Origin: Octopus sinensis
Lineage: Eukaryota
Length of the DNA: 64,000 nt
Assembly: GCF_006345805.1 (NCBI RefSeq)
Contig: NC_043003.1
Span: 61,814,001-61,878,000, forward strand
Direction of reading: 5' to 3'
This document shows, one piece after another, positions 1-64,000 of this stretch (the first letter of the stretch is position 1; every line of letters starts with the position of its first letter). Made by a program: the position numbers and the translations under genes. The notes below the pieces were generated by a model. That model saw only the letters and a list, made by a program, of their open reading frames with translations, was not told the origin of the DNA and did not search any database.

Positions 1-877
1 TCTTTTTTTCTTTAAAGCTTGGTTCAAACACTCTAATTGCTGACAGTAGACTTGAGCATTGGTTGTTGCATTAGATGGTAACAATTCAAAGTGAATTACT
101 CCTTTGCAATCCCACCAGATAGAGAGAAGAACCTTTTTTCCATGACGTTCCCTTCTCTATGTGGTTGAACTTTTTCCCTTTTACCAAGCCACTGTTTATG
201 ATGTTTAACATTTCGATAGAATGATCCATTTTTTGTCACCAATCACAAGTCTATCCAAAAAGTGTGAAATGAGTGCGCGAGAATGGAGATAAGAACAGAT
301 GTCAACTCGGGATTTGTGGTTGCTTTCAGAATATTCATGAGGCACCAATTTTCCAAGTTTAGGAATCTTTCCAAGTTGTTGCAGATGACGATGAACAGTG
401 GTATGGTTTGCACTAAGCTTTATTTTGAATTCTTCAACTGATAATGCAGGATTTTCTTCAAGTAATGCCTCAAGGAGCTTATCATCAAACTCAACTGATG
501 TCCTGTTCAATCTTCATCTTCAAGGCCGAAATCTCCACTTCTGAATTTTGCAAACCATCTTCTGCAAGTTCTTTCATTCAAGCATTCTTTCCCATAAACT
601 GAGTGTATGTTTCGAGTCACTTCGGCTGCAGAGTTTCCTTTTTTGTACTCATAAAGCATTATGTACCTTAAATGCTCTTTGGATACTTCCACGTTAGAAA
701 GGGTTTTAATCAAAGAAATTTTTATTCTATTATTCTTTAAAATAATATTTGATTAGTTTAAATGTACATAAATGCATAAAAATAATTTTTAATTCCATTA
801 GACATTCTAAAATACTATTAAATTTTATTCAATTTTAAAAAGGTAAAATCGGACAGAACTTATGGGATAAGCTGATA
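1..877 (-). mobile_element. Decayed mariner (Tc1/mariner) transposon, 5' half, running off the window start
   Basis: Frameshifted ORFs 507-713 (LRYIMLYEYKKGNSAAE...RRWFAKFRSGDF, mariner HTH) and 205-510 (KLVPHE...DRLVIGDKKWI). Bases 1-200 read KKVLLSIWWDCKGVIHFELL. A TIR-like end lies at 845-877. Confidence 0.93.
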
Positions 878-14189: not shown

Positions 14190-14712
14190 TGGGGCAAGCG
14201 AAATCGAAATCGAATTGAACCAGCCAGGATCCCTGGTCTGGTGGTACGTAAAAAGCACTATCCGACTCGTGGCCGTGGCACGTAAAATACTCCAATGCGA
14301 CCGTACGACAGCACCCTTGCCAACCCCCTTTGCTTGTGAAGACATGTTGGGGCAAGCGAAATCGAAATCGAATTGACCAGCCAGGATCCCTGGTCTGGTG
14401 GTACGTAAAAAGCACTATCCGACTCGGGCCGATGCCAGCACCGCCTCGACTGGCTTCCGTGCCGGTGGCACATAAAATACACCAATCTGACCGTGGCCGT
14501 TGCCAGCCCCGCCTGGCACCTGTGCAGGTGGCACGTAAAAAGCACCCACTACACTCACGGAGTGGTTGGCGTTAGGAAGGGCATCCAGCTGTAGAAACAT
14601 TGCCAAATTAGACTGGAGCCTGGTGCAGCCTTCTGGCTTTCCAGAACCCGGTCGAACCGTCCAACCCATGCTAGCATGGAGAACGGACGTTAAACGACGA
14701 TGATGATGATGA
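14190..14712 (+). mobile_element. RTE-related 3' end with 158-bp internal tandem duplication (copy A)
   Basis: ggggcaagcgaaatcgaaatcgaattg at 14191 and 14349, then standard tail and (GAT)n. Confidence 0.9.
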
Positions 14713-14879
14713 TATAGTGGTAAAAACGGTAAGATAACAAAAGAAAGAAAAAGACCTGAATATTATGTAAATAGAGGAAATTTATCTGTAAAATAATATG
14801 TGACAATTATTCAATAGCCAAGATAAAACTCTGAGTTTCGGATGCCGAGGAGGAAATCCACATCACCATCTCTTCGGTT

Positions 14880-16080: not shown

Positions 16081-16168
16081 AAATTATTATAAGCGGCTGT
16101 GGATAAAGATCACAAAAATATATTAAAAATGTAAAGCAGCAGGCTATTGTCATGACCATTAATAATTC

Positions 16169-16721
16169 GTAAAACATTTTGATATTTTCCCTCTTTGGTT
16201 GTTCTTTATCTTCTTCTATACCAGTATATCAGGAGATATGCCTGTGGATGGTACTCAATCAAGTTGAAAGCTTGTGGTTTAGAATATAAATTAGACTTCC
16301 GGTAGAATATTTTAAATATATTGTTCGACTTTTTGTGATAAGCCCAGGATTATTTTCAGAAAGAAGCTGCTCTTGTTGAAAAGGGTTAAACATCTAGAAC
16401 AGTGCATGAGTGAATATGAAAGCATGTTGGATGGATGTAGCATGCCAATAGTCATTGAGTCACAGAAAGACCCATATCACTTTTCATCAGAAGACATGGA
16501 CTTGGATTTGGAAGATCTTAATGATGACGCACCTATGGAATCAATTAATTTAAGAATCAAAGTGAACAATATATTTAAAATATTCTACCGGAAGTCTAAT
16601 TTATATTCTAAACCACAAGCTTTCAACTTGATTGAGTACCATCCACAGGCATATCTCCTGATATACTGGTATAGAAGAAGATAAAGAACAACCAAAGAGG
16701 GAAAATATCAAAATGTTTTAC
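16169..16721. repeat. Perfect 158-bp inverted repeat (16169-16326 / 16564-16721) with 237-bp spacer
   Basis: The arms are exact reverse complements when compared base by base. Confidence 0.97.
16360..16684 (+). other. Unidentified protein-like ORF or exon within the inverted repeat (KKLLLLKRVKHLEQCMSEYESMLDG...DMDLDLEDLNDD...)
   Basis: Stop-free 16316-16684. Possible acceptor ttattttcag at 16359 and weak donor AAA|gtgaac at 16561. No family recognised. Confidence 0.4.
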
Positions 16722-17211
16722 ATATTAAAATTCTTTGAATGAGAATTTTTTCCTTATTAGTCTGGAATTTATGAAACATTTGTTTTATGTTTGTATTTGT
16801 TGTATATTAATAGTTTGAGGTTGATAAGCATGTATGTATTATGCAGTCATGTATTGTATGCATGTATTATGTGCATATATTTTCATTTAAAGCTAAAGCT
16901 GTTGCTACGAGGAATGGGTGCTGCTTTGATTTCAAAAGAATAAAAAAAAAAAAACTTTAGATGTAGTCAACATCTCTTTATGTGATGGATGAGTAATAAC
17001 TTATATATGTAGAGCATGTAACTACACCTCATATGTACACACACAATATATAATATATATATATATATATTATATATATATATATATATATAATATATAT
17101 ATATATATTATTAATCAATATAGGGTGGCAAAAAAATTTTGTAGAATTTTTTTGCCACCAGCGGCCTAGTGGGAAAAAATTAAATAGTCATAGACCATTT
17201 TTAAGTTCAAC

Positions 17212-17375
17212 ATCAACAATCAAGGAACGGCCACAATAGGCCACTCACCCACCAGAAACAACAGCCAAAGCTTCAACCGCAAATAAACCGGAATTGATTT
17301 TTATTTGCGGTTGAAGCCTTGGCTGCTATTTCCAGTGGGTGAACGGCCCACTATGGCCGTTCCTTGATTGTTGAT
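17212..17375. mobile_element. Fold-back (MITE-like) hairpin element
   Basis: atcaacaatcaaggaacggcc...cttcaaccgcaaataaa pairs with tttatttgcggttgaag...ggccgttccttgattgttgat. Arms about 76 bp, imperfect. Confidence 0.65.
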
Positions 17376-19070: not shown

Positions 19071-19610
19071 AAGACATGTTGGGGCAAGCGAAATCGAAAT
19101 CGAATTGAACCAGCCAGTATCCCTGGTCTGTGGTGTATGTAAAGCACTATCCGACTCGTGGCCGTGGCACGTAAAATACTCCAATGCGACCGTACGACAG
19201 GCACCCTTGCCAACCCCCTTTGCTTGTGAAGACATGTTGGGGCAAGCGAAATCGAAATCGAATTGAACCAGCCAGGATCCCTGGTCTGGTGGTACGTAAA
19301 AAGCACTATCCGACTCGTGGCCGATGCCAGCACCGCCTCGACTGGCTTCCGTGCGGTGGCACATAAAATACACCAATCTGACCGTGGCCGTTGCCAGCCC
19401 CGCCTGGCACCTGTGCAGGTGGCACGTAAAAAGCACCCACTACACTCACGGAGTGGTTGGCGTTAGGAAGGGCATCCAGCTGTAGAAACATTGCCAAATT
19501 AGGACTGGAGCCTGGTGCAGCCTTCTGGCTTCCCAGAACCCCGGTCGAACCGTCCAACCCATGCTAGCATGGAGAACGGACGTTAAACGACGATGATGAT
19601 GATGATGATA
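19071..19610 (+). mobile_element. RTE-related 3' end with 158-bp internal duplication (copy B)
   Basis: Near-identical to 14190-14712. Duplicated unit starts at 19081 and 19239. Confidence 0.9.
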
Positions 19611-25925: not shown

Positions 25926-26010
25926 GTAAGTAGATTGCTTACTAACCACATGGTTCCATGTTCAGTCCCACTGTGTGGTCCCTTGGGCAAGTGTCTTCTA
26001 CTATAACCTC
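25925..26010 (+). mobile_element. tRNA-SINE head fragment
   Basis: ggtaagtagattgcttac...ggttccatgttcagtcccactg...cttgggcaagtgtcttctactata. Confidence 0.75.
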
Positions 26011-27850
26011 AGGATTTCGTAGACAAACATGTGCCATCCCAGGCAGAACCGTTCAAGATACCCTCCATCTTATTCGCTATACCATAGAGGGTTGGTAATA
26101 ATCTGGCAAAGGTGGGGCATTGGTACATTTTAGACCAGTCTAAAGCTTTTGATTGGGTTGACCATCTATACCTGGCGAGTGTGCTTGCGCGGTTCGGCCT
26201 GGGCCTTAGCTTCCTCAGGTGGTTTATCGCTTTGTACCACAACATTGACTCGATAGTTCGGGTGAACGGTTTCGTTTCGAAGCCGCTCTGCATCAGACGC
26301 TCGGTTCGTCAAGGATGTCCGCTCTCACCACTTTTGTATATAATGGCTCTCGAGCCCCTACTACGAAGGTTGAGTGGCATCCCGAGAGAACAAGGTCTAG
26401 AGGAGTTTGTTACGGCTTACGCAGATGATATCACTATCAGCGTAACCTCGGTAGCAAGCCTACGTGAAGTGGGTAAAACTATTGAGGCTTACGAGGAGGT
26501 GGCAGGAGCAAAGATTAACCGGGAAAAGTCGGTCGACTTGCAGCTCGGCACCTAGGTTGCAAGTCGATGCCTTCAGACAGCGTTGTTGGGCGCTGGGCGG
26601 AGGGACTGGTTAAGTTGCTGGGAGTTTGGTTTGGACCAGGCCTCCAGATAGAGATGAACTGGACGGAGATATTGAGCAGGGTGGCTGCAGTAGTCAAGAC
26701 CTGGTCTTGGCGGTGTCTATCCCTGAAAGGGAGGGCGGAGGTGGTCATTGTTTTTATCGCATCGGTCAATGCCTACCGCCTGACCGTCGTGCCCTGTCCG
26801 GATACGTGGTTCACCAGGTATGAGAGACAGTTGTGAAACGCTGTGTCTGCTGTCAAAAGCCTTTAAAGGGAGGTTTAGGGATGCCTTGGTTAATGATGCT
26901 CAGGCACCTCAGGATTCTCCTGGATAGTGGACGAGTGTGGTCTCCGCTGGCCAGACAAATCTTCCCCGAGTTCAAAACTTTTGCGATCAGGAAGGCTGAT
27001 GTTCTCACAGACCGAGGTCGAGTGAGTGGCATAAAGAGTGCCGTAAGGCCCCCTTGCTATTCCGGCGCTCGGTCAACGCCAGAGGTGGGGGTTCCACACG
27101 GATTTTATATAGTGGGTTGGTAGAGTCTGAATGCGACGATAGCCTGGGTGTGACTCTAGGTCTCGGGTTTATTCAACTGGATAGCCTGTTTCACCGTACA
27201 TTCGGGTTGAGAACGTTGGACAACTTCCAAAAGTCATTAACCTGGCAATGCTACAGAGGTGCCTTGCCCGTTTGGGATAAGCTCGTAAGACATGGTAAGC
27301 GTCAGTCGCCGACCTGTCCAAGATGCCGGGGGATGGGCAGGGAAACCGTCCCGCACACTATTATTCAGTGTCTGGAGATAACTGAAATGTGGGCTTATGC
27401 TGAATACCTGTTGGCCGGCGAAGGAAGAGTACACCTGTCGACTGAGTCAATTATAAAAATTGACCCACTGGGAGTTTTAACGAACGATCGTAAGAATTGT
27501 TTTCTCACAGTTGTCGCAATAGCGAAAGATGCAGTATGGAAGACTAGGGTAAAAAGAATTAAGACAGGCAACTTTATCTCTGGCCACAATTTACGATCAT
27601 TTTTTCTTTTCATTTGAAAAGGAAGCTGTGGCTGGAGAAGAGATGTTTGTCGGAGTGTACGTTCCAAAAGAGATGGAAGCATGTAGCACAAGTGGTGTGC
27701 GTGCAAAGAGCCGTGTGAATAGACGGGAAAAAAAGAAGAAAATAAAGGTACCAGCGGTAGATCGTGGCTTGTGTGGTCGGAGCATGGCCTGATCATCGCT
27801 TCATTTGTATTGTTAGTTCAATTCCATTTTTTTCTATTGTATTAAAATTT
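26010..27850 (+). mobile_element. Tx1/L1-group LINE ORF2: RT domain to 3' end, frameshifted
   Basis: LDQSKAFDWVDH...VRQGCPLSPLLY...AYADDITI...GAKINREKS, KGGLGMP, and the zf-RVT-like CPRCRGMGRETVPHTIIQC. Confidence 0.92.
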
Positions 27851-28109
27851 TTAAAGTCATATTATATGTAAAATCATATCACTTCACTGATCCCATCAGT
27901 TGTTCTGTCCATTTCTATGTTTGGCCCCCGGTGGGCAATAAAGAAATTGGTATTGCATCTGTGAGAGTTGGAAGTGTTGGTATTGTTGCCGAAGGCATCT
28001 GTATAGTAAGTGTAGTTTCTGTTGATTGTTTCCGTGTTGTTGGCTGTTTTAATTGCTGTTAAAATTTGTATAATAGTTTTTGTTTGCAATCTATTATGTG
28101 TTTTCCCCT

Positions 28110-29000
28110 GTAGGGGAAACACTAATTACTGGCAGGATGCCAAAAAGTGTGTATTTATATGACGAGGATTCGACAGATTTGGAGGCCAGAAAAGTGGAAA
28201 TAGCATTGTTGGAAGATGTTACGGATTCTTCTGAGAGCGAATTCCCATCACTGTCGAGGACTGACGTTGCAGGGAAGAGCGTCGAAGTGAAAGGACTTCA
28301 AACGGAGGAGGGTAAACAGAAAAGAAGTTTTGCGTCTGCAGCTGGAGACAGAACTCGCCAACTGTCGACGAAGAAAAGTGACGTTTTAATGTACCAGGAC
28401 ATGATAAAAATTCAAGACGGCGTTGTCAAGGTTCAACCCGCAGAAGAGCTTTTATTGACAGAGAAGAAAAAAACAATTATGTTTAAAACATACTGCCGAA
28501 AAGAAAGAAAAATCAAGCGAGTAAGCGAGGAGAAGGTACAAAAATGTCTAAAGCCCAACTGGCAGGATATAAGATATCTAGCCAGAGGGAAAAAATTCGG
28601 TACCATCGAGGTACACCTAAAAACATTGAAACTGCACAATTGCACTCGGTAAAATCTTTCGAAACAGAAGATGTGATTTTAATACCAATATACATGGTTA
28701 TGAGGTCATCAAAAATACGAATATCAAAGGTCCCACATCGAGTCGACCCTATGTGTTTGATGGCGGCAGTCCTGGCAGAAAGGGTAGATGAGATAACAAT
28801 ACTTCATGCTAACGTTTCACAAAAGGCAAATTGGACCGGCCACATGGTACACCTGTTAATTCAAACAGAACAGGCTGTATTAGATTCGTGGTTGATCAGG
28901 TAAAAGAGACAGTTCTTTAGCTTTTTGTGGGAGGGCAGGTCGCCACTTGTGAAACGCTCTGCCTGCTGTCAAAAACTTTAAAGGGAGGTTTAGGGATGCC
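28110..29000 (+). mobile_element. Tx1-like ORF1 remnant joined to a post-RT ORF2 segment (internally deleted)
   Basis: ORFs 28080-28652 and 28544-28903 (RRM-like ARGKKFGTIEV). LWEG...LKGGLGMPWL at 28925-29010 matches 26835-26895. Confidence 0.65.
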
Positions 29001-29215
29001 TTGGTTAAGAATTGTGCATGAGACGACAGCTACTTTTGAGAAATCTCGATTTGCGCATGAGAAAGTAAGGAGCGATGTCAGGAAGGGCATCCCTGTTGCA
29101 CTTCCTGACGGTAAGGGTCTTCCTATGACGCTGACATATAATGTCTGTGCAAGACCCTGCCTCAGTAAAGCTGCGCTCATGAGCCATCTTTATAGTCATA
29201 AATCGAGACCGATGA
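29000..29215 (+). mobile_element. RTE/BovB-like extreme C-terminus
   Basis: RIVHETTATFEKSR...RK...YNVCARPCLSKAALMSHLYSH, a decayed terminal C2H2-like finger. Confidence 0.55.
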
Positions 29216-30479
29216 TTGACTACCAGGCCGCTGATTATTTAGCAGAAAAAAGCTGGGGATCATCCCAAAGTTTAAAAATATCTGTTTCAACACATTCCAA
29301 CTGTGTCTTCTACTCCCCCTCCAAATACAAACTTCAATGAATTTTAGGAATTTTTCCTTCTTGCTGATGATCTTGCCGCTTTCGCAGTTTTTCGTTCAAT
29401 TGAACTCTTCCTTCGGGGCATGATCTAAAATAAGCATGATGAATGCAGTGAGATACACTGATAAGTATTAAATATTAATTGAAGGGTTAGTATGTAAGTG
29501 TAGATAAGTTGCAAACTTGCAGCTGCTGCGGTAATAAAGAACTGGTAGTAGAAAAGTAAATGTGTAAAATAAAATGATGTCATCAAAATGAAAATGGAAG
29601 CAGTTGTGAAAGGCAAGGCGAGGGAAATGGTAAGAGCAACGGAGAAAGTGGTTATGAATTGCGTTGAGAATGTTGTGGTTTGCGTGGACATGAATTTTTG
29701 GGGTGTTGTTTGTCAATGCATGGCTGCTCTGCCGTATAGATTGGATGGGAAAAGAGTTAATGAAAGAGCAATTGGATGAATTGCTTAGCTTTGTTTAGTG
29801 GTGCTCGTTGAGCAGAAACTGCCGTTGATGCTGCATGTGAGTGTAGGAATAGTTATAGGTAAGTTGGTAGGTCTGCAGGCCCGCATTAAGGAAGACGCAA
29901 AAAAAAAATATTGGTAAATTTTAATGCGTGGCAGCAGCGCGTGGTAGAAATAGCAGTGAAATGTCTCAGATTTCCTTAGTGAAACGCGTGCGGTTGCATT
30001 TAGGGAAATTGATGCAATTTACAAATGAAAAAGGTTACGCACGGAATTCAACAAAATGAATAAATGTGCTTTAGTTAATCAGTATTGCTTTGATAGAACA
30101 ATATTGTGAAAGAGAAGACGAGAGAAATGGTAACAAGGAAAGGAGACAGGGATTATGAATTGCGTTCTGAATGTTGTTTGCCAGGACATGAATTTTGTCG
30201 TATTAATAAAAAAGCAGACAGCTAGAAGGATGAAGAAAGATATCAGTGGTGTGGGGGCTAGAGGTGAAGTGGATGACAATATATTTTACTTGACAAGGTA
30301 GCATGTGGTTAATGTATGTTACCATCTTCCCTTGTCTCGTCGCGAGAAGTAAGTTCTGCCGTGGTAATGAAATGAGAATGCGATGTAAGGGGACAATGTT
30401 TTCGAGAATCTGGTTGGAATGTAAGGCAGGTCTGAAAGGGTTACCAACAGTGGTAGAGTGTTTATGAGGAATATGTATG

Positions 30480-32009: not shown

Positions 32010-34360
32010 TATTTATTCTCTTGTGCAAGGGCTTCTCTCCAACCCAAAAGAAAGAAATATATGAGGAAACCAATTTTAAAATGCCTTCTGATAAAGTTTT
32101 GACCATAATGTCGGGCGAAGAATTTTTGAACGGAAAAATTGTTGAAACAATTGAGTCTAATTTCGCTGCAGTAGCAAGACTAAAAAGGAAAACCTTAAAC
32201 ATGACAAATGAATAATTAAACCAATTCAAAAATATATTCGAGAGGAAGATGCATGATTTGAAAGCCACCTTCCTGAGTTAATTGAAAACACAACAAAAAA
32301 AATTAATTGGTTTTAAATGTCTGAACATTAAAACTAAAAAGTTGGACAATGCGTGAAGAGGGGGTCGAGAAATGCTTGCAACCAATATGGTGGGATATTG
32401 CATTTATCACCAGAGGTCGCAAATTTGCAACCATTATCGTTCACCTAAAAAGTGAAGGGCGAAGGAGCTTTCAGTAATAGTAATGCTACCGATTTCACAG
32501 TGGAATAATTCCACTAGAAATAGATGTAATAGATGTAACATGACTCTACGCTGCTCTAATCATGGGCCTCGAGGATAAAATAACAATTCTCGAGGTTAGT
32601 AAAATAGAGCAGCAACATTGGAAGGAACAAGGGCTAGAGATCATGATTCAAGCAGCTCAACAAACTCTTCAAGAGATAGTGGAAAACATCGTGATTAATG
32701 AGGAAACTACGTTGAGGGTGACGGTGGAGGGTAGGATGCCACGGTGCTTCGAATGTGGGGGGAAAAGGCCACATTCGAGTAAACTGCCCCGCCCTAAAAG
32801 AAGAAACAGCGCCGCCAGCAGAGTCTCCAGCAAAAATCATAAAAGAGGAGACCATACCATCAACCGAAAACAAGGAAGACAAAGAAGGATGGACTAATGT
32901 AACCCATAAAAAGAAAAAAGTCCCTAAAAGAAAAACTGCCAACCTCACCCTTTCAACTTCCAGCTCTAGCAAAAGAAAAACACCCCCACCAGCAGACACA
33001 CATGACCCCCTCCCACTTCAACCAACCCAAACATGGACCCCCAAAAATCACCTGTAGAATGTACCCCTCCCAGTCCCGAAAAATATTTCCCCTCCCAACA
33101 AGAAACGAGCCTGATAGAAGTGAATGCTAACAACTAGGCATTAAAAAACTCCAACCGCAAAAGAATACAGCAATCATTATACTATTCTACCGGAAGGAAT
33201 TGTAATCTATGAAATTGACAGAGACAATTACAATTTATTGCATAGCTACCACTCGAAGAACATAGGCCCTCCAAGAATGGACATTTGCAAGTCCATGTAC
33301 GAGGGAAGATAGAGAGAAGGGATTATAATCCCTTCTTCTTCGAAAGGTAAACCACATTTCATGGTTTCGCTCACAGATTTATCCGCTCGGGGTGAGGAGA
33401 AACAGTAGGATATTTAAATTTCGTGGCCTCGGGTCGGATTGGAAATAAGGTCGCTTTCTTAATGACCTCAGGCCACATAGACTGGATGTGATAGTGGCCA
33501 CAGAGACCAGACTGAATAGGTTGCGGGACTTTTCCCCACTCCTGAACTCCATGCCAACGGGGGGGGGGGTAGTGGTGTCACGATCCTACTCAGGGAAAAA
33601 CCTGGTTTCCGAGACTAGAACAATCAGGCTGGTAGGTGTCCATGTCCACTGCGGGGCTGGACAATCTGCTTTTTTTAGACGCCTAGAAAATTTCCTAGGC
33701 ACGTCTAACAATTTAGTACTGCTGGGTGACTTTAACACAATCTGCGATGCACGTGTAGATTGTGTTGGCTCAAATCCAAATAGAAGGGGAAAGTTATGCC
33801 TCGCCGATCTGCTTAGTCGCTTTCAGCTGGCAGATCGGTACAGACTAAAATTTCTGAACGCTCCACTGTGGACCTGGACGAATAGCGACAGGTCTTCTAG
33901 ATCTTATTTAAATAGAATTTTAGTTAGACGGAAAGACAAGGAGAAGCTAGATGTCCACAATTCCACTTTGTTAACTACAATGACCACAAACTTGTGTCCT
34001 GTAAGCTGGTTGTAGATAGGATATGTAGACAAGGCCCCGATTACTGGAAAATTAAATGGTCGGTTTTGACCTGTGAGGAGTACAGGAAACGGATTAGAAA
34101 AGAAGGCTCTCACAGGCGCCATTATTAACAACAAATGGTGGAAGGCATTGGAGAAAGGTAGGGCAGCCCAAGTGTTGGCATCGAGATTGGCGCTCAACCA
34201 ACACGTCGAGTATTTAATACGAAGTTTGGATTGTCAGGTCGAAGTTTCGTGCAATGGGTCGACAAGGATCCAACACTGCGAGATGGGACACTGTGGTAAA
34301 CGAACCGGAGGAGATATGCAAGGTTCTTTACGAGCTTTTCAGACAGCTTTGCGATGACTG
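32010..34360 (+). mobile_element. Tx1/L1-group LINE 5' half: ORF1 (CCHC knuckle) and AP endonuclease, decayed
   Basis: CFECGGK/GHIRVNC zinc knuckle across a frameshift at about 32765. DVIVATETRL...VLLGDFNTICD...WTWTN...SYLNRILV endonuclease motifs at 33440-34050. Confidence 0.9.
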
Positions 34361-54465: not shown

Positions 54466-54609
54466 TAAAGAGAGTATAAATATTAGAGTTTCAATTGATT
54501 AAAATTATTTACCATCCACCTCTCAAGTATGGTACCCTTCATTTACATATGTGTGTATGTGCCTATCAATTCTGTTCTATATTTCAGAGATGAGGAATTC
54601 TATACATTA

Positions 54610-54955
54610 TTTGCATTATTTACATTGGATGGATATGTGTCCTCATCTTGTTTGTTGTTACAACAACATTACATGGTTAAGAGTGTGGGCTACTAACCCC
54701 AAGATTCTGAGTTCAATTCCAGGCAGTGCCTTGAATAAATAACAGCAGCAGCAGCAACAACAACAACAACAACAACAGCAACAGCAGCAGCAGCAGCAGA
54801 TGATGACATCAGCAAAGAAATACCTCAGGGTTGGGTTCAAAATTCTACCAGGAGGTAGAATTCTACCAAGAAGGCCGGAGAGTAAATCAGCTGAAATGTT
54901 GTGGTAACAACAAACAAGATGAGGACACATATACGTCCAATGTAAATAATGTAAA
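54610..54955. repeat. ~60-bp inverted repeat enclosing a tRNA-like head and a (CAG/CAA)n tract
   Basis: 54610-54670 pairs with 54895-54955. Confidence 0.85.
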
Positions 54956-56024
54956 CAGTGTGTCTATCAATGTTGTTTCATAATAATTGATTTAATGTCT
55001 GCTTTTCCATGCTTGCATGGGTCAGACAAAACTCCCAGAGGCAGATTTTTTACAACTGGATATTCTTCCTGTTATGAACAATATTTTCTCCAAGTTTGGA
55101 CATCTTTATCATGAAAGATTACAAACAAACAGCATAGTTTGTATGATGGAAGACATTATTTATACTCAGTGTGTAATATCAAAATAAAGAGGTACACACA
55201 GACACACACACACAAATGACAGGCTTTTCAATTTCCATCAGCCAAGTTTACTCACAATGCTTTGGTTGACCCAATGTGCCATACAACAGGACTGTAACTG
55301 AAACCATGTGGTCACTAAGTGAATTTCTTAACCATACAGCCATACCTGTAGCTGAGTGCATGTGTACAAGCATACATACATTTATATATATTTATACATA
55401 CACACATGCATATTATGTTTGTGTGTGTGTGTGTGAGAGAGAGAGAAGAGAGATAGAGTGTGTGTGTGAGGACATTTATATGCATGTGAAGAGTTTATAT
55501 CTCTTAGCAATCTATATCAGCTAAAGATGTAAACATCATTTCAAATAAACTCCCTTGTGATATTTGTTCCACCCAATGTGCACAGACAGACAAACCATTA
55601 TCATTCTCACCATGGTTGATGCAGTGATCCGGTGATCGGTCTATTGGAAACCTGTGATAAACGACACTATTGTTCATGAGATATGATATAAAACAAATAA
55701 ATATATGAGTATATATGTGTACATGTGTGTGTATGTGTGTATGTATGTACGCGCGTGTGTGTGTGTGTATGTATGGCTACAAAATTACCAATGACAAAAG
55801 ATGACATGAAACAGATCAAAGAAATAAGTGTGGATGGAACCATAGCCAAAACTGTATCATTAGTAATAGGAATCTTCAGTATCTGATACCTCAAAGAAAT
55901 TGATTATGTTCAATATATTAGAAAACAGAGAGGAAATAAATATTTTCTAGTTGGTACATAAAAAAGTATAGATATTCAATGAATATGCTTACAGTAAATC
56001 CATACTTCTCGATAGCATCTTTAT

Positions 56025-63069: not shown

Positions 63070-64000
63070 AGAAAGGAAGGTAGGAGACAGGTTTATTTAG
63101 CCAGAGGGGAAGCAGATAAGAAAAAATTTGCCAATGTTCTGTGCCGTGAGGATCAAAGACTTGAGGTATTTCGTGTTGCAAGACAGTGTGTGAGAGAGAA
63201 TTGTGATGTATGAAAGAAATGTGTCCGCATGGATGATGGTTCTCTTGCACTAAACGAAGTTGCAAAGAGAGAGGTTTGGAGACGCCACTATAAAAGGTTG
63301 CTCTATAGAGAGAATGAATGGGAGAAAGAGAGTCTGCCGAATGTCAACCCAACAGAGGGACCAGCTATCTGAGTTGACAGTACCTTGGTGGATAAAGTAA
63401 TTAAGAGTGTGAAGACTGGGAAAGTCCCCAGCCTATCAGGAATCACTGCAGAGATGTTCAAAATATCTGGCAGTGTCGGCTATAGCGTACTCACCTGTAT
63501 AATTAACCAGGTGACACACGAAGGAGTAATACCCAATGACTGGTGTAGCAGCATAATAGCCAACTGCTACAAAGGTAAAGGTAATGTTTTATATACAAAT
63601 AATTACAGAGATATCAAGTTGTTGGATCAGGTAAAGAAGGTCATAGCCCAACTAATTAGGGAGAGAGTCAGTTTAGATGAGATGCAGTTTGGGTTCGTGC
63701 CAGTGAAAAGTACCACTGATGCTATATTTCTGGTAAGACAGCTGCAGAAGAAATACCAAGCCAAAGATAAACCTCTGTACCTGGATTTCGTTGTCATGGA
63801 GAAAGCCTTTGACAGGGTCCCCCAATCTCTTATCTGGTGGTCAATGAGGAAACTAGGGATAGATTAATGCTTAGTGAGAGCTGTGCAAGCCATGTTAAGG
63901 GATGCTATCAGTAAGGTGAGGGTTGGCAACGAGTACACTGAAGAATTCAGGGTAGAGGTAGGGGTCCACCAAGGTTCAGATCTCAGCTCCCTCCTATTTA
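63070..64000 (+). mobile_element. RTE LINE ORF2 (RT N-terminal half), decayed, running off the window end
   Basis: IPNDWCSSII..CYKGKG...NYRDIKLL...QFGFVPVKSTTDAIF..RQLQKKY...MEKAFDRVP...GVHQGSDLS. Confidence 0.95.

What the first reader, a model, noticed from the sequence alone, without database searches (positions are those of the whole stretch)
16169..16721. Perfect 158-bp templated inverted insertion bracketing an ORF or exon
Seen: 16169-16326 is the exact reverse complement of 16564-16721, the duplicated sequence matches no repeat elsewhere in the window, and the spacer is 237 bp. TTCG lies at both edges of the left arm (16166-69 and 16324-27), and ACTTT microhomology lies at the inner junction. 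Inference: this is a very recent template-switch or polymerase-theta-type insertion, or a chimeric-read assembly artefact. If real and transcribed from either strand, it folds into 158 bp of perfect dsRNA. That would loop out the spacer and cover the candidate donor at 16562. Coleoid cephalopods have extensive ADAR editing, so it would be a prime editing, exon-skipping or back-splicing substrate.
Basis: partly seen in the sequence, partly recalled or inferred. Interest (0 to 1): 0.75.

Follow-up and report, generated by a model that had tools for sequence, protein, structure and literature searches.

The report
Spliced gene fragment between perfect inverted repeats
The perfect 158-base inverted repeat is real in the sequence, but it brackets an intron-less scrap of an octopus gene's messenger RNA pasted into the genome rather than a working exon, so it is most likely a scar of error-prone DNA repair or reverse transcription.

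Summary
16169-16326 is the exact reverse complement of 16564-16721 (158 nt, 237-nt spacer), and the arm has no other copy in the window.

The spacer is not an exon in place. Window 16358-16568 matches, without introns, part of exon 5, all of exon 6 and the first 15 nt of exon 7 of an Octopus bimaculoides gene. That gene is P0001, 476 aa, with a weak DUF4709 match, and its exons are separated by introns of 2.4 and 8.5 kb. No other exon of the gene lies in the 64 kb.

The cDNA homology ends inside the first 5 nt of the right arm (GAACA). The pairing continues 5 nt into cDNA-derived sequence (ACTTT/AAAGT). TTCG flanks the left arm. I found no adjacent poly(A), no target-site duplication above chance, no second copy and no Rfam match.

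Best reading (about 0.45): one microhomology-mediated template-switching event captured a cDNA patch and made a fold-back copy of 158 nt next to it.

Rivals are a two-step history, a palindrome or long-TIR element that acquired the patch, and an assembly artefact. Reads, other individuals and RNA data were not available.

The parts
16169..16326 (.). Left arm of the perfect inverted repeat (158 nt, 31% G+C)
   Evidence: Exact reverse complement of 16564-16721. No other copy in the window or in L001.
16564..16721 (.). Right arm of the perfect inverted repeat. Its first 5 nt (GAACA) are also the last 5 nt of the cDNA homology.
16358..16568 (+). Processed (spliced) cDNA fragment of the octopus gene represented by P0001. 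16358-16465 corresponds to exon 5 (cDNA 374-483), 16466-16553 to exon 6, and 16554-16568 to the first 15 nt of exon 7. The reading frame of the parent is intact.
   Evidence: Continuous alignment to the spliced O. bimaculoides CDS across both exon junctions; 90.8% nt identity over 207 nt, 75% aa.
16327..16357 (+). Junction segment of unresolved origin between the left arm and the confidently cDNA-derived part. It has weak, colinear but non-significant similarity to the 5' part of exon 5 (DKPRI versus DKHRI) and contains the apparent polypyrimidine/AG 'acceptor'.
   Evidence: Local alignment is no better than shuffles, 217/500. Colinear global alignment. A 10-mer, TTTTTGTGAT, also occurs as reverse complement at 16109-16118; this is about chance level.
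16328..16332 (.). ACTTT, complementary to AAAGT at 16559-16563 (cDNA-derived), offset from the arm by the single bulged G16327. It extends the palindrome into the cDNA patch.
   Evidence: The chance of a given reverse-complement 5-mer match is about 2e-3.
16559..16563 (+). AAAGT, the partner of ACTTT, part of parental exon 7 sequence (ATC AAA GTG AAC)
16166..16169 (+). TTCG at the outer edge of the left arm, repeated at 16324-16327 (inner edge). A possible switch-return microhomology.
   Evidence: The chance of a given 4-mer identity is about 6e-3.
16324..16327 (+). Second TTCG (the last 3 nt of the left arm plus G16327)
16163..16166 (.). TAAT, complementary to 16724-16727 beyond two mismatches. 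A possible imperfect annealing site at the outer junction.

Best explanation
This is a genuine but functionless mutational scar. A short internal piece of spliced mRNA/cDNA from a coiled-coil gene (codons ~125-195 of the 476-aa O. bimaculoides P0001 homologue) was patched into non-coding DNA. In the same microhomology-mediated template-switching episode the extending 3' end snapped back on itself and copied 158 nt of the adjoining sequence in reverse complement, so the cDNA patch became the loop of a perfect hairpin-forming repeat. Shown: the spacer is intron-less cDNA; the arms abut it exactly; microhomologies sit at the junctions. Inferred: that there was a single event; which enzyme acted (a LINE-type reverse transcriptase jumping templates, or a faithful repair/replication polymerase, rather than Pol theta); and which arm is the original. 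The sequence fits two variants. In the first, the right arm is native: its bottom-strand end ...TGTTC anneals to GAACA in the mRNA, about 211-237 nt are reverse transcribed, and the end snaps back through AAAGT/ACTTT to copy the arm. In the mirror variant, the left arm is native and the snap-back is primed by AAAGTGAACA on TGTTC(G)ACTTT. If transcribed, the locus would give a 158-bp perfect dsRNA stem. Nothing here shows that it is transcribed or used.
For: 1. Spliced origin. Window 16358-16568 aligns continuously across two exon-exon junctions of the P0001 CDS. In O. bimaculoides those exons lie at L001 22744-22890, 25318-25405 and 33875-33945.
2. It is a fragment, not an orthologue with lost introns. 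Homology starts inside exon 5 and stops 15 nt into exon 7. No other P0001 exon is found in the 64 kb, and the flanks show no homology above shuffles.
3. Exact bracketing. The cDNA homology ends at 16568 and the right arm starts at 16564. The left arm ends 0-31 nt from the other end of the patch.
4. Junction microhomologies. These are GAACA (5 nt, about 2e-3 by chance), ACTTT/AAAGT (5 nt with one extra base), TTCG (4 nt, about 6e-3) and TAAT..G at the outer junction.
5. No adjacent poly(A) and no target-site duplication above chance. This is the signature described for class 2 templated sequence insertions, which include spliced cDNA patches joined with microhomology and non-templated bases (PMC5110952).
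6. Template switching is an established source of perfect inverted repeats and hairpins (PMC5453318, PMC8794818).
7. The parental reading frame is intact over 69 codons, with 5 synonymous and 12 non-synonymous differences from O. bimaculoides. That fits a young copy whose differences are mostly between-species divergence of the parent.
Against: There are no reads, no second individual and no sister-species locus, so neither the empty site nor the order of events is observed. The parent gene of the window's own species was not retrievable, so the age of the cDNA patch relative to the perfect arms is unknown. A 158-nt snap-back copy is far longer than typical repair-templated inserts, which are under 25 bp (PMC5068794), and longer than twin-priming overlaps, median 12 bp (PMC12016303). 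No single variant of the model uses all of the microhomologies seen, so at least one of them must be chance. Perfect arm identity can also be kept up by gene conversion, so 'recent' is not proven.
Confidence: 0.45

Rival explanations
1. Pre-existing inverted repeat that later acquired the cDNA. This would be either an AT-rich palindrome or foldback that broke at its centre and was repaired with a cDNA patch, or a DNA transposon/MITE with long terminal inverted repeats carrying a captured gene fragment (Pack-type element).
For: It explains naturally why the patch lies exactly between the arms. The arms are AT-rich, 69% A+T. Palindrome centres are known break hot spots and Pack-type elements carry host gene fragments (both from my own knowledge). 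A TTAA/ATTAA direct repeat can be placed at 16158-62 and 16724-28. Another imperfect hairpin (17212-17375) and another inverted pair (54604/54892) lie in the same window.
Against: No second copy of the arm in 64 kb plus 68 kb of octopus DNA. The best flanking direct repeats are 5-nt AT-rich matches among 441 boundary combinations, which is about the number expected by chance. There is no transposase and no recognisable terminal motif. The arm complementarity continues 5 nt into cDNA-derived sequence (ACTTT/AAAGT), which is easier to explain if an arm was copied after the cDNA was joined to it.
Confidence: 0.2
2. Two-step history, closest to the first reader's view. An older cDNA patch sat next to native sequence (the right arm). 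A recent replication template switch then copied 16564-16721 in reverse complement and inserted it at ...AATAATTCG|ACTTTTT.
For: TTCG occurs at both edges of the left arm, with TAAT..G partial homology at the landing site, as expected for switch and return points. This fits the four-point template-switch model (PMC5453318). The patch differs by 9% from the O. bimaculoides gene while the arms are identical.
Against: It needs two coincidences: the copied segment must begin exactly at the cDNA/flank junction, and it must be inserted within 31 nt of the other end of the patch. My rough estimate of the joint chance is about 1e-3. The 9% divergence may simply be species divergence of the parent gene, and the intact frame favours a young patch.
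Confidence: 0.15
3. Assembly or sequencing artefact: a chimeric or fold-back read, or a polishing or gap-filling error, fixed in the consensus.
For: Perfect identity of the arms and uniqueness of the structure in the window. No independent sequence of this locus could be retrieved.
Against: The window has no N and looks like a long-read assembly (compared with 6,591 N in L001). Known fold-back read artefacts give read-scale palindromes without a structured 237-nt spacer (my own knowledge). The loop is a spliced cDNA piece joined through microhomologies, which points to a cellular reverse-transcription/repair event rather than to an assembler.
Confidence: 0.12
4. A working exon flanked by inverted intronic repeats, as in circRNA-forming or ADAR-regulated exons.
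For: AG at 16358-59 after a T-rich run and GT at 16562-63. A stop-free frame over 16316-16681.
Against: The segment crosses two parental exon junctions and breaks inside parental exons 5 and 7. No neighbouring exon of the gene is in the window. The GT is the parental Val codon. A 38-codon stop-free run occurs at 17% of random places in this window.
Confidence: 0.03

Closest known systems
Class 2 templated sequence insertions (cDNA 'patches' at repaired double-strand breaks; Onozawa et al., reviewed in PMC5110952)
   Same: Both are short internal pieces of spliced RNA-derived sequence, without a poly(A) tail or a target-site duplication, joined with microhomology and an extra base.
   Different: The described cases are simple patches. 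Here the patch is bracketed by a perfect 158-nt inverted duplication of flanking sequence. The organism is an octopus, not human cells.
Template-switch mutations that create perfect inverted repeats and hairpins (four-point model; PMC5453318, PMC8794818)
   Same: A segment is an exact reverse complement of nearby sequence, with short homologies at the switch points, and the result is hairpin-forming.
   Different: The published events are mostly tens of bases and replace sequence of similar length. This one is a 158-nt net insertion coupled to a cDNA insertion.
LINE reverse-transcriptase template jumping: twin priming (5' inversions) and chimeric retrocopies (PMC12016303; Ostertag & Kazazian 2001, cited there)
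   Same: The material is RNA-derived. An inverted segment has its outer end at an internal priming site, sequence is shared between the inverted and non-inverted parts, and there is microhomology at the junctions.
   Different: There is no 3' end of the mRNA, no adjacent poly(A) and no target-site duplication. The overlap is 158 nt against a median of 12 bp. The inverted part is not parental mRNA sequence.
Pol theta snap-back templated insertions in alternative end joining (PMC5068794, PMC4912351)
   Same: The insert is a reverse complement of the flank, with priming on 1-5 nt and reiterated priming and switching.
   Different: Pol theta inserts are typically under 25 bp with about 1 error per 30 bp. 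Here 158 nt are copied without error.
Pack-type or foldback DNA transposons, and palindromic AT-rich repeats (from my own knowledge)
   Same: Long inverted arms bracket a host gene fragment, and the arms are AT-rich.
   Different: No target-site duplication above chance, no further copies in 132 kb and no terminal motif. The captured piece is spliced.
Hairpin-RNA (endo-siRNA) loci and inverted-repeat-flanked circRNA exons (from my own knowledge)
   Same: The predicted transcript has a long perfect stem with a gene-derived loop.
   Different: In hpRNA loci the arms, not the loop, match the target gene. In circRNA loci the loop is a real exon. Neither holds here. Expression is unknown.

Membership tests
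Processed (retro)copy of a cellular mRNA | Colinear with the spliced transcript and lacking the parent's introns | tested here: met
   Two exon-exon junctions are crossed seamlessly at 16465/16466 and 16553/16554. The parental introns are 2.4 and 8.5 kb in L001.
Processed (retro)copy of a cellular mRNA | Canonical LINE-mediated hallmarks: the 3' end of the mRNA, a poly(A) tail and a target-site duplication | tested here: not met
   The fragment is internal (cDNA 374-586 of 1431). The nearest A-run (A13, 16944-56) lies 376 nt away and has no matching flanking repeat. No target-site duplication above chance.
Class 2 templated sequence insertion (DSB patch) | RNA-derived insert without TSD or poly(A), with microhomology or non-templated bases at the junctions | tested here: met
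   GAACA overlap at the right junction, an extra G16327, and no TSD or poly(A). Criteria taken from PMC5110952.
Class 2 templated sequence insertion (DSB patch) | An empty (uninserted) allele or orthologous site exists | not testable with these tools
   No cephalopod genome or read set could be searched by DNA. Metagenome scans found nothing.
Template-switch mutation (four-point model) | The inserted segment is the exact reverse complement of a nearby segment | tested here: met
   158/158, 237 nt apart.
Template-switch mutation (four-point model) | Ancestral state lacking the copy, so that direction and switch points can be assigned | not testable with these tools
   No outgroup locus is available. 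The direction R->L is suggested only by TTCG flanking the left arm and by the absence of an equivalent repeat at the right arm.
DNA transposon / MITE / Pack-type element with terminal inverted repeats | Target-site duplication directly flanking the repeats | tested here: not met
   The best results are three 5-nt AT-rich matches among 441 boundary combinations, against about 1 expected by chance.
DNA transposon / MITE / Pack-type element with terminal inverted repeats | Multiple dispersed copies in the genome | tested here: inconclusive
   None in the 64-kb window or in 68 kb of O. bimaculoides sequence. The whole genome was not available.
Exon flanked by intronic inverted repeats (circRNA or exon-skipping substrate) | The bracketed segment is an exon of a gene in place, with neighbouring exons and used splice sites | tested here: not met
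   The segment merges parts of three parental exons. No other exon of the gene is in the window. Splice-site use is not testable.
Known structured RNA family (miRNA and others) | Match to an Rfam covariance model | tested here: not met
   No hit inside 16163-16727. Only sub-threshold hits on TA/CA microsatellites nearby.
Hairpin-RNA / ADAR substrate | Transcription across both arms, with small RNAs or A-to-G clusters | not testable with these tools
   No RNA data. Only the in-silico fold is available.

The most novel reading that the evidence does not exclude
A heritable, single-step event in an octopus germ line in which RNA-templated break repair (or LINE reverse-transcriptase template jumping) both captured a spliced mRNA fragment and built a 158-bp perfect fold-back around it. 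That would create, de novo, a long hairpin-RNA locus that is transcribed and heavily A-to-I edited or diced. It would be a natural example of how template switching manufactures new structured-RNA genes from scratch in a lineage with extreme ADAR activity.
Probability: 0.08. Interest if true: 0.65.

Novelty: new variant of a known kind. Interest (0 to 1): 0.35.

Why it matters
If the structure is real, it is a clean natural specimen that combines two known error-prone processes: capture of a cDNA patch, and fold-back template switching. The scale is unusual, with 158 nt copied without error. All junctions are still readable, which is useful for inferring which enzymes repair breaks in cephalopod germ lines. 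It also shows how a long perfect hairpin can arise in one step.

It also carries a practical warning. An open reading frame with apparent splice sites between inverted repeats can be a retro-fragment rather than an exon, so predictions of exon skipping, circRNA formation or editing built on it would be misplaced.

On present evidence this is a single, probably neutral locus with no sign of function.

Tried and rejected
- **Protein word-index searches.** The window peptide found nothing. P0001, whole or as its N-terminal 308 aa, found only itself. No orthologue from the window's own species could be obtained, so the patch could not be dated.
- **Exact look-ups.** The ORF over the spacer and right arm, with ATG or TTG start, is not on record.
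- **Collection scans.** Two metagenome scans (arm 31-mer, cDNA 39-mer) and one viral scan (arm 26-mer) gave no match.
- **Rfam.** The only hits near the locus are sub-threshold microsatellite artefacts.
- **cDNA homology continuing upstream of the left arm.** This would have shown the arm to be an insertion into a longer retrocopy. Alignments of 16082-16168, with or without 16327-16357, are no better than shuffles.
- **Right arm plus downstream sequence as the parent's alternative 3' end or UTR.** No similarity to the 68-kb parental locus.
- **A13 at 16944-56 as a retrocopy tail.** No flanking direct repeat.
- **The 97% direct repeats at 14190-14713 and 19080-19606 as LTRs enclosing the locus.** Rejected. 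They are two young copies of a SINE-like family with (GAT)n tails and many older copies in the window and in L001.
- **Meaning of the stop-free frame running into the right arm.** Rejected. 17% of random 38-codon stretches in this window are stop-free.
- **Pol theta as the copying enzyme.** Judged unlikely on insert length and fidelity.

Full report
**1. Observation.**
The inverted repeat is exactly as described. Window 16169-16326 is the perfect reverse complement of 16564-16721 (158/158), with 237 nt between the arms.
- If two mismatches and a one-base bulge (G16327) are allowed, the complementarity extends to 16163-16332 and 16559-16727.
- The TTCG tetramers at 16166-69 and 16324-27 are present, as is ACTTT at 16328-32.
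- The arm has no other copy in the window or in 68 kb of Octopus bimaculoides DNA fetched later.
- It is the only inverted pair of at least 60 nt above 95% identity in the 64 kb.
- As RNA the region folds at -329 kcal/mol, z = -31 against shuffles.
- No Rfam family matches inside it.

**2. What the spacer is.**

An exhaustive HMMER search found one real relative, P0001, at E = 1.5e-30 and 75% identity. A source names it 'uncharacterized protein DDB_G0283697 [Octopus bimaculoides]'. It is 476 aa, with a weak DUF4709 match and otherwise coiled-coil. Its gene was retrieved as locus L001 (CM046602.1, 48 kb).

Mapping the protein onto L001 shows that the stretch matched by the window lies on three separate exons: L001 22744-22890, 25318-25405 and 33875-33945. 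They are separated by introns of 2.4 and 8.5 kb with normal GT/AG borders.

In the window the same sequence is continuous:
- 16358-16465 corresponds to exon 5, from cDNA position 374;
- 16466-16553 corresponds to exon 6;
- 16554-16568 corresponds to the first 15 nt of exon 7.

Identity is 90.8% at the nucleotide level.

Homology begins inside exon 5 and stops inside exon 7. No other exon of the gene is detectable in the 16 kb upstream or the 47 kb downstream. Neither the flanks nor the arms resemble the cDNA or the parental locus beyond what shuffled sequences give.

The spacer is therefore a fragment of processed cDNA, not an exon in place. The 'acceptor' AG lies where the cDNA homology begins, and the 'donor' GT is the parental GTG (Val) codon. 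The stop-free extension into the right arm is not informative, because 17% of random 38-codon stretches in this window are stop-free.

The window is probably from another Octopus species and a long-read assembly. This is an inference from two points: it has no N, whereas L001 has 6,591, and the patch diverges by 9% from the O. bimaculoides gene.

**3. Anatomy of the junctions.**
- The cDNA homology ends at 16568 and the right arm starts at 16564. GAACA is therefore shared by both.
- The palindrome continues beyond the perfect arms, across one extra base, into cDNA-derived sequence: ACTTT at 16328-32 pairs with AAAGT at 16559-63.
- TTCG flanks the left arm. No comparable repeat flanks the right arm.
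- At the outer junction, TAAT (16163-66) pairs with 16724-27 beyond two mismatches.
- From the window's own k-mer spectrum, a given 4-mer or 5-mer coincidence has a probability of about 6e-3 or 2e-3.
- No poly(A) adjoins the fragment. The A13 run 376 nt downstream has no flanking repeat.
- The best candidate target-site duplications are 5-nt AT-rich matches, at about the number expected by chance among the boundaries tried.
- The 31 nt between the left arm and the confident cDNA part (16327-16357) are of unresolved origin. They show a colinear but non-significant resemblance to the start of exon 5.

**4. Mechanism.**
*Shown:* a spliced cDNA patch sits exactly between two perfect inverted copies of an otherwise unique 158-nt sequence, with short homologies at every junction.

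*Inferred:* the most economical history is one template-switching episode, which comes in two variants.
- *Right arm native.* The bottom-strand 3' end ...TGTTC of the native right-hand sequence anneals to GAACA in the mRNA. It is extended by a reverse-transcribing polymerase for about 211-237 nt. The new 3' end (...AAAGT plus one extra base) then folds back onto ACTTT in the nascent strand and copies the 158 nt. The product is joined to the left flank at the partial homology TAAT..G.
- *Mirror variant, left arm native.* The snap-back is primed by AAAGTGAACA on TGTTC(G)ACTTT.

Both variants explain why the loop is the patch and why the arms are identical. Neither uses the TTCG repeat.

The enzyme is unknown. 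Two published observations argue against simple assignments:
- Pol theta templated inserts are mostly under 25 bp with about one error per 30 bp (PMC5068794), which fits poorly with 158 error-free bases.
- LINE twin-priming overlaps have a median of 12 bp and normally come with poly(A) and target-site duplications (PMC12016303).

The nearest published description of the patch itself is the class 2 templated sequence insertion. These include spliced cDNA pieces, lack TSD and poly(A), and are joined with microhomology and non-templated bases (PMC5110952). The nearest description of the arms is template-switch mutation, which generates perfect inverted repeats and hairpins (PMC5453318, PMC8794818).

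**5. Rivals.**
- **(a) Pre-existing palindrome or long-TIR transposon that received or carried the patch.** It explains the bracketing. It has no target-site duplication above chance, no other copies in 132 kb and no terminal motif. It leaves the ACTTT/AAAGT extension into the cDNA as coincidence.
It needs the copied segment to begin exactly at the cDNA/flank junction and to land at the other end of the patch.
- **(c) Assembly artefact.** It cannot be excluded without reads. It is hard to reconcile with a spliced, microhomology-joined loop in a gap-free assembly.
- **(d) A real exon.** Effectively excluded.

Perfect arm identity suggests a recent origin, but gene conversion between the arms could also maintain it.

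**6. Age and function.**
The parental frame is intact over 69 codons, with 5 synonymous and 12 non-synonymous differences from O. bimaculoides. This is what one expects if most differences are divergence of the functional parent and the copy is young, but the sample is small.

Nothing indicates function. No known RNA family matches, the arms resemble no gene found here, and transcription could not be tested. If the locus is transcribed, the 158-bp perfect duplex would be an obvious ADAR or Dicer substrate (general knowledge), but the stem does not match the parent gene, so it would not target it.

**7. Verdict.**
- The best explanation is a neutral scar of a microhomology-mediated cDNA capture with fold-back copying (about 0.45).
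- It is a new variant of known kinds.
- Interest is moderate to low until reads, population data or RNA data show that it is real and expressed.

Noticed in passing
window 17212-17375: A second, imperfect hairpin about 500 nt downstream of the right arm. The 164-nt segment is 83% identical to its own reverse complement, is relatively GC-rich, is followed by a TA microsatellite and folds as DNA at -67 kcal/mol (z = -16). Only sub-threshold Rfam miRNA hits fall on it, and there is no other copy in the window or in L001. It could be a palindromic MITE or an older template-switch hairpin.
   Followed up: partly
window 54604-54673 and 54892-54961: Another inverted pair: 70-nt arms at 90% identity with a 218-nt spacer. 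The spacer holds a (CAG/CAA)n run and a tRNA-like box (GAGTTCAATTCC), suggesting a SINE piece between the arms. It is unrelated in sequence to the 158-nt arms.
   Followed up: partly
window 14190-14713 and 19080-19606: Two direct copies, 97.4% identical over 529 nt, of a SINE-like element. The element has internal 86-nt repeats and a (GAT)n tail. Older copies (74-88% identical) are scattered through the window and through the O. bimaculoides locus. The pair flanks the finding at about -2 kb and +2.4 kb but does not look like LTRs.
   Followed up: partly
window 205-752 (- strand): ORFs that look like the N-terminal DNA-binding part of a mariner/Tc1-type transposase, judged by eye only (...EENPALSVEEFKIKLSANHTTVHRHLQQLGK...). 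They are broken across frames and are probably a dead DNA transposon.
   Followed up: no
window 26009-29340, 33488-34360 and 63385-63867: Several ORFs that look by eye like reverse transcriptase, endonuclease or gag. They are probably LINE or Penelope-type remnants, and would be possible local sources of reverse-transcriptase activity.
   Followed up: no
L001 (O. bimaculoides CM046602.1:103960794-104028730): The parent gene's C-terminal half is built from about ten near-identical 48-nt exons, each encoding (K/R)KSA(I/V)SSKEDYKDA-type repeats. This is an exon-per-repeat architecture.
   Followed up: no
tool behaviour: The word-index protein search missed P0001, although the query shares exact words of 12-13 residues with it. 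The exhaustive HMMER search found it.
   Followed up: yes
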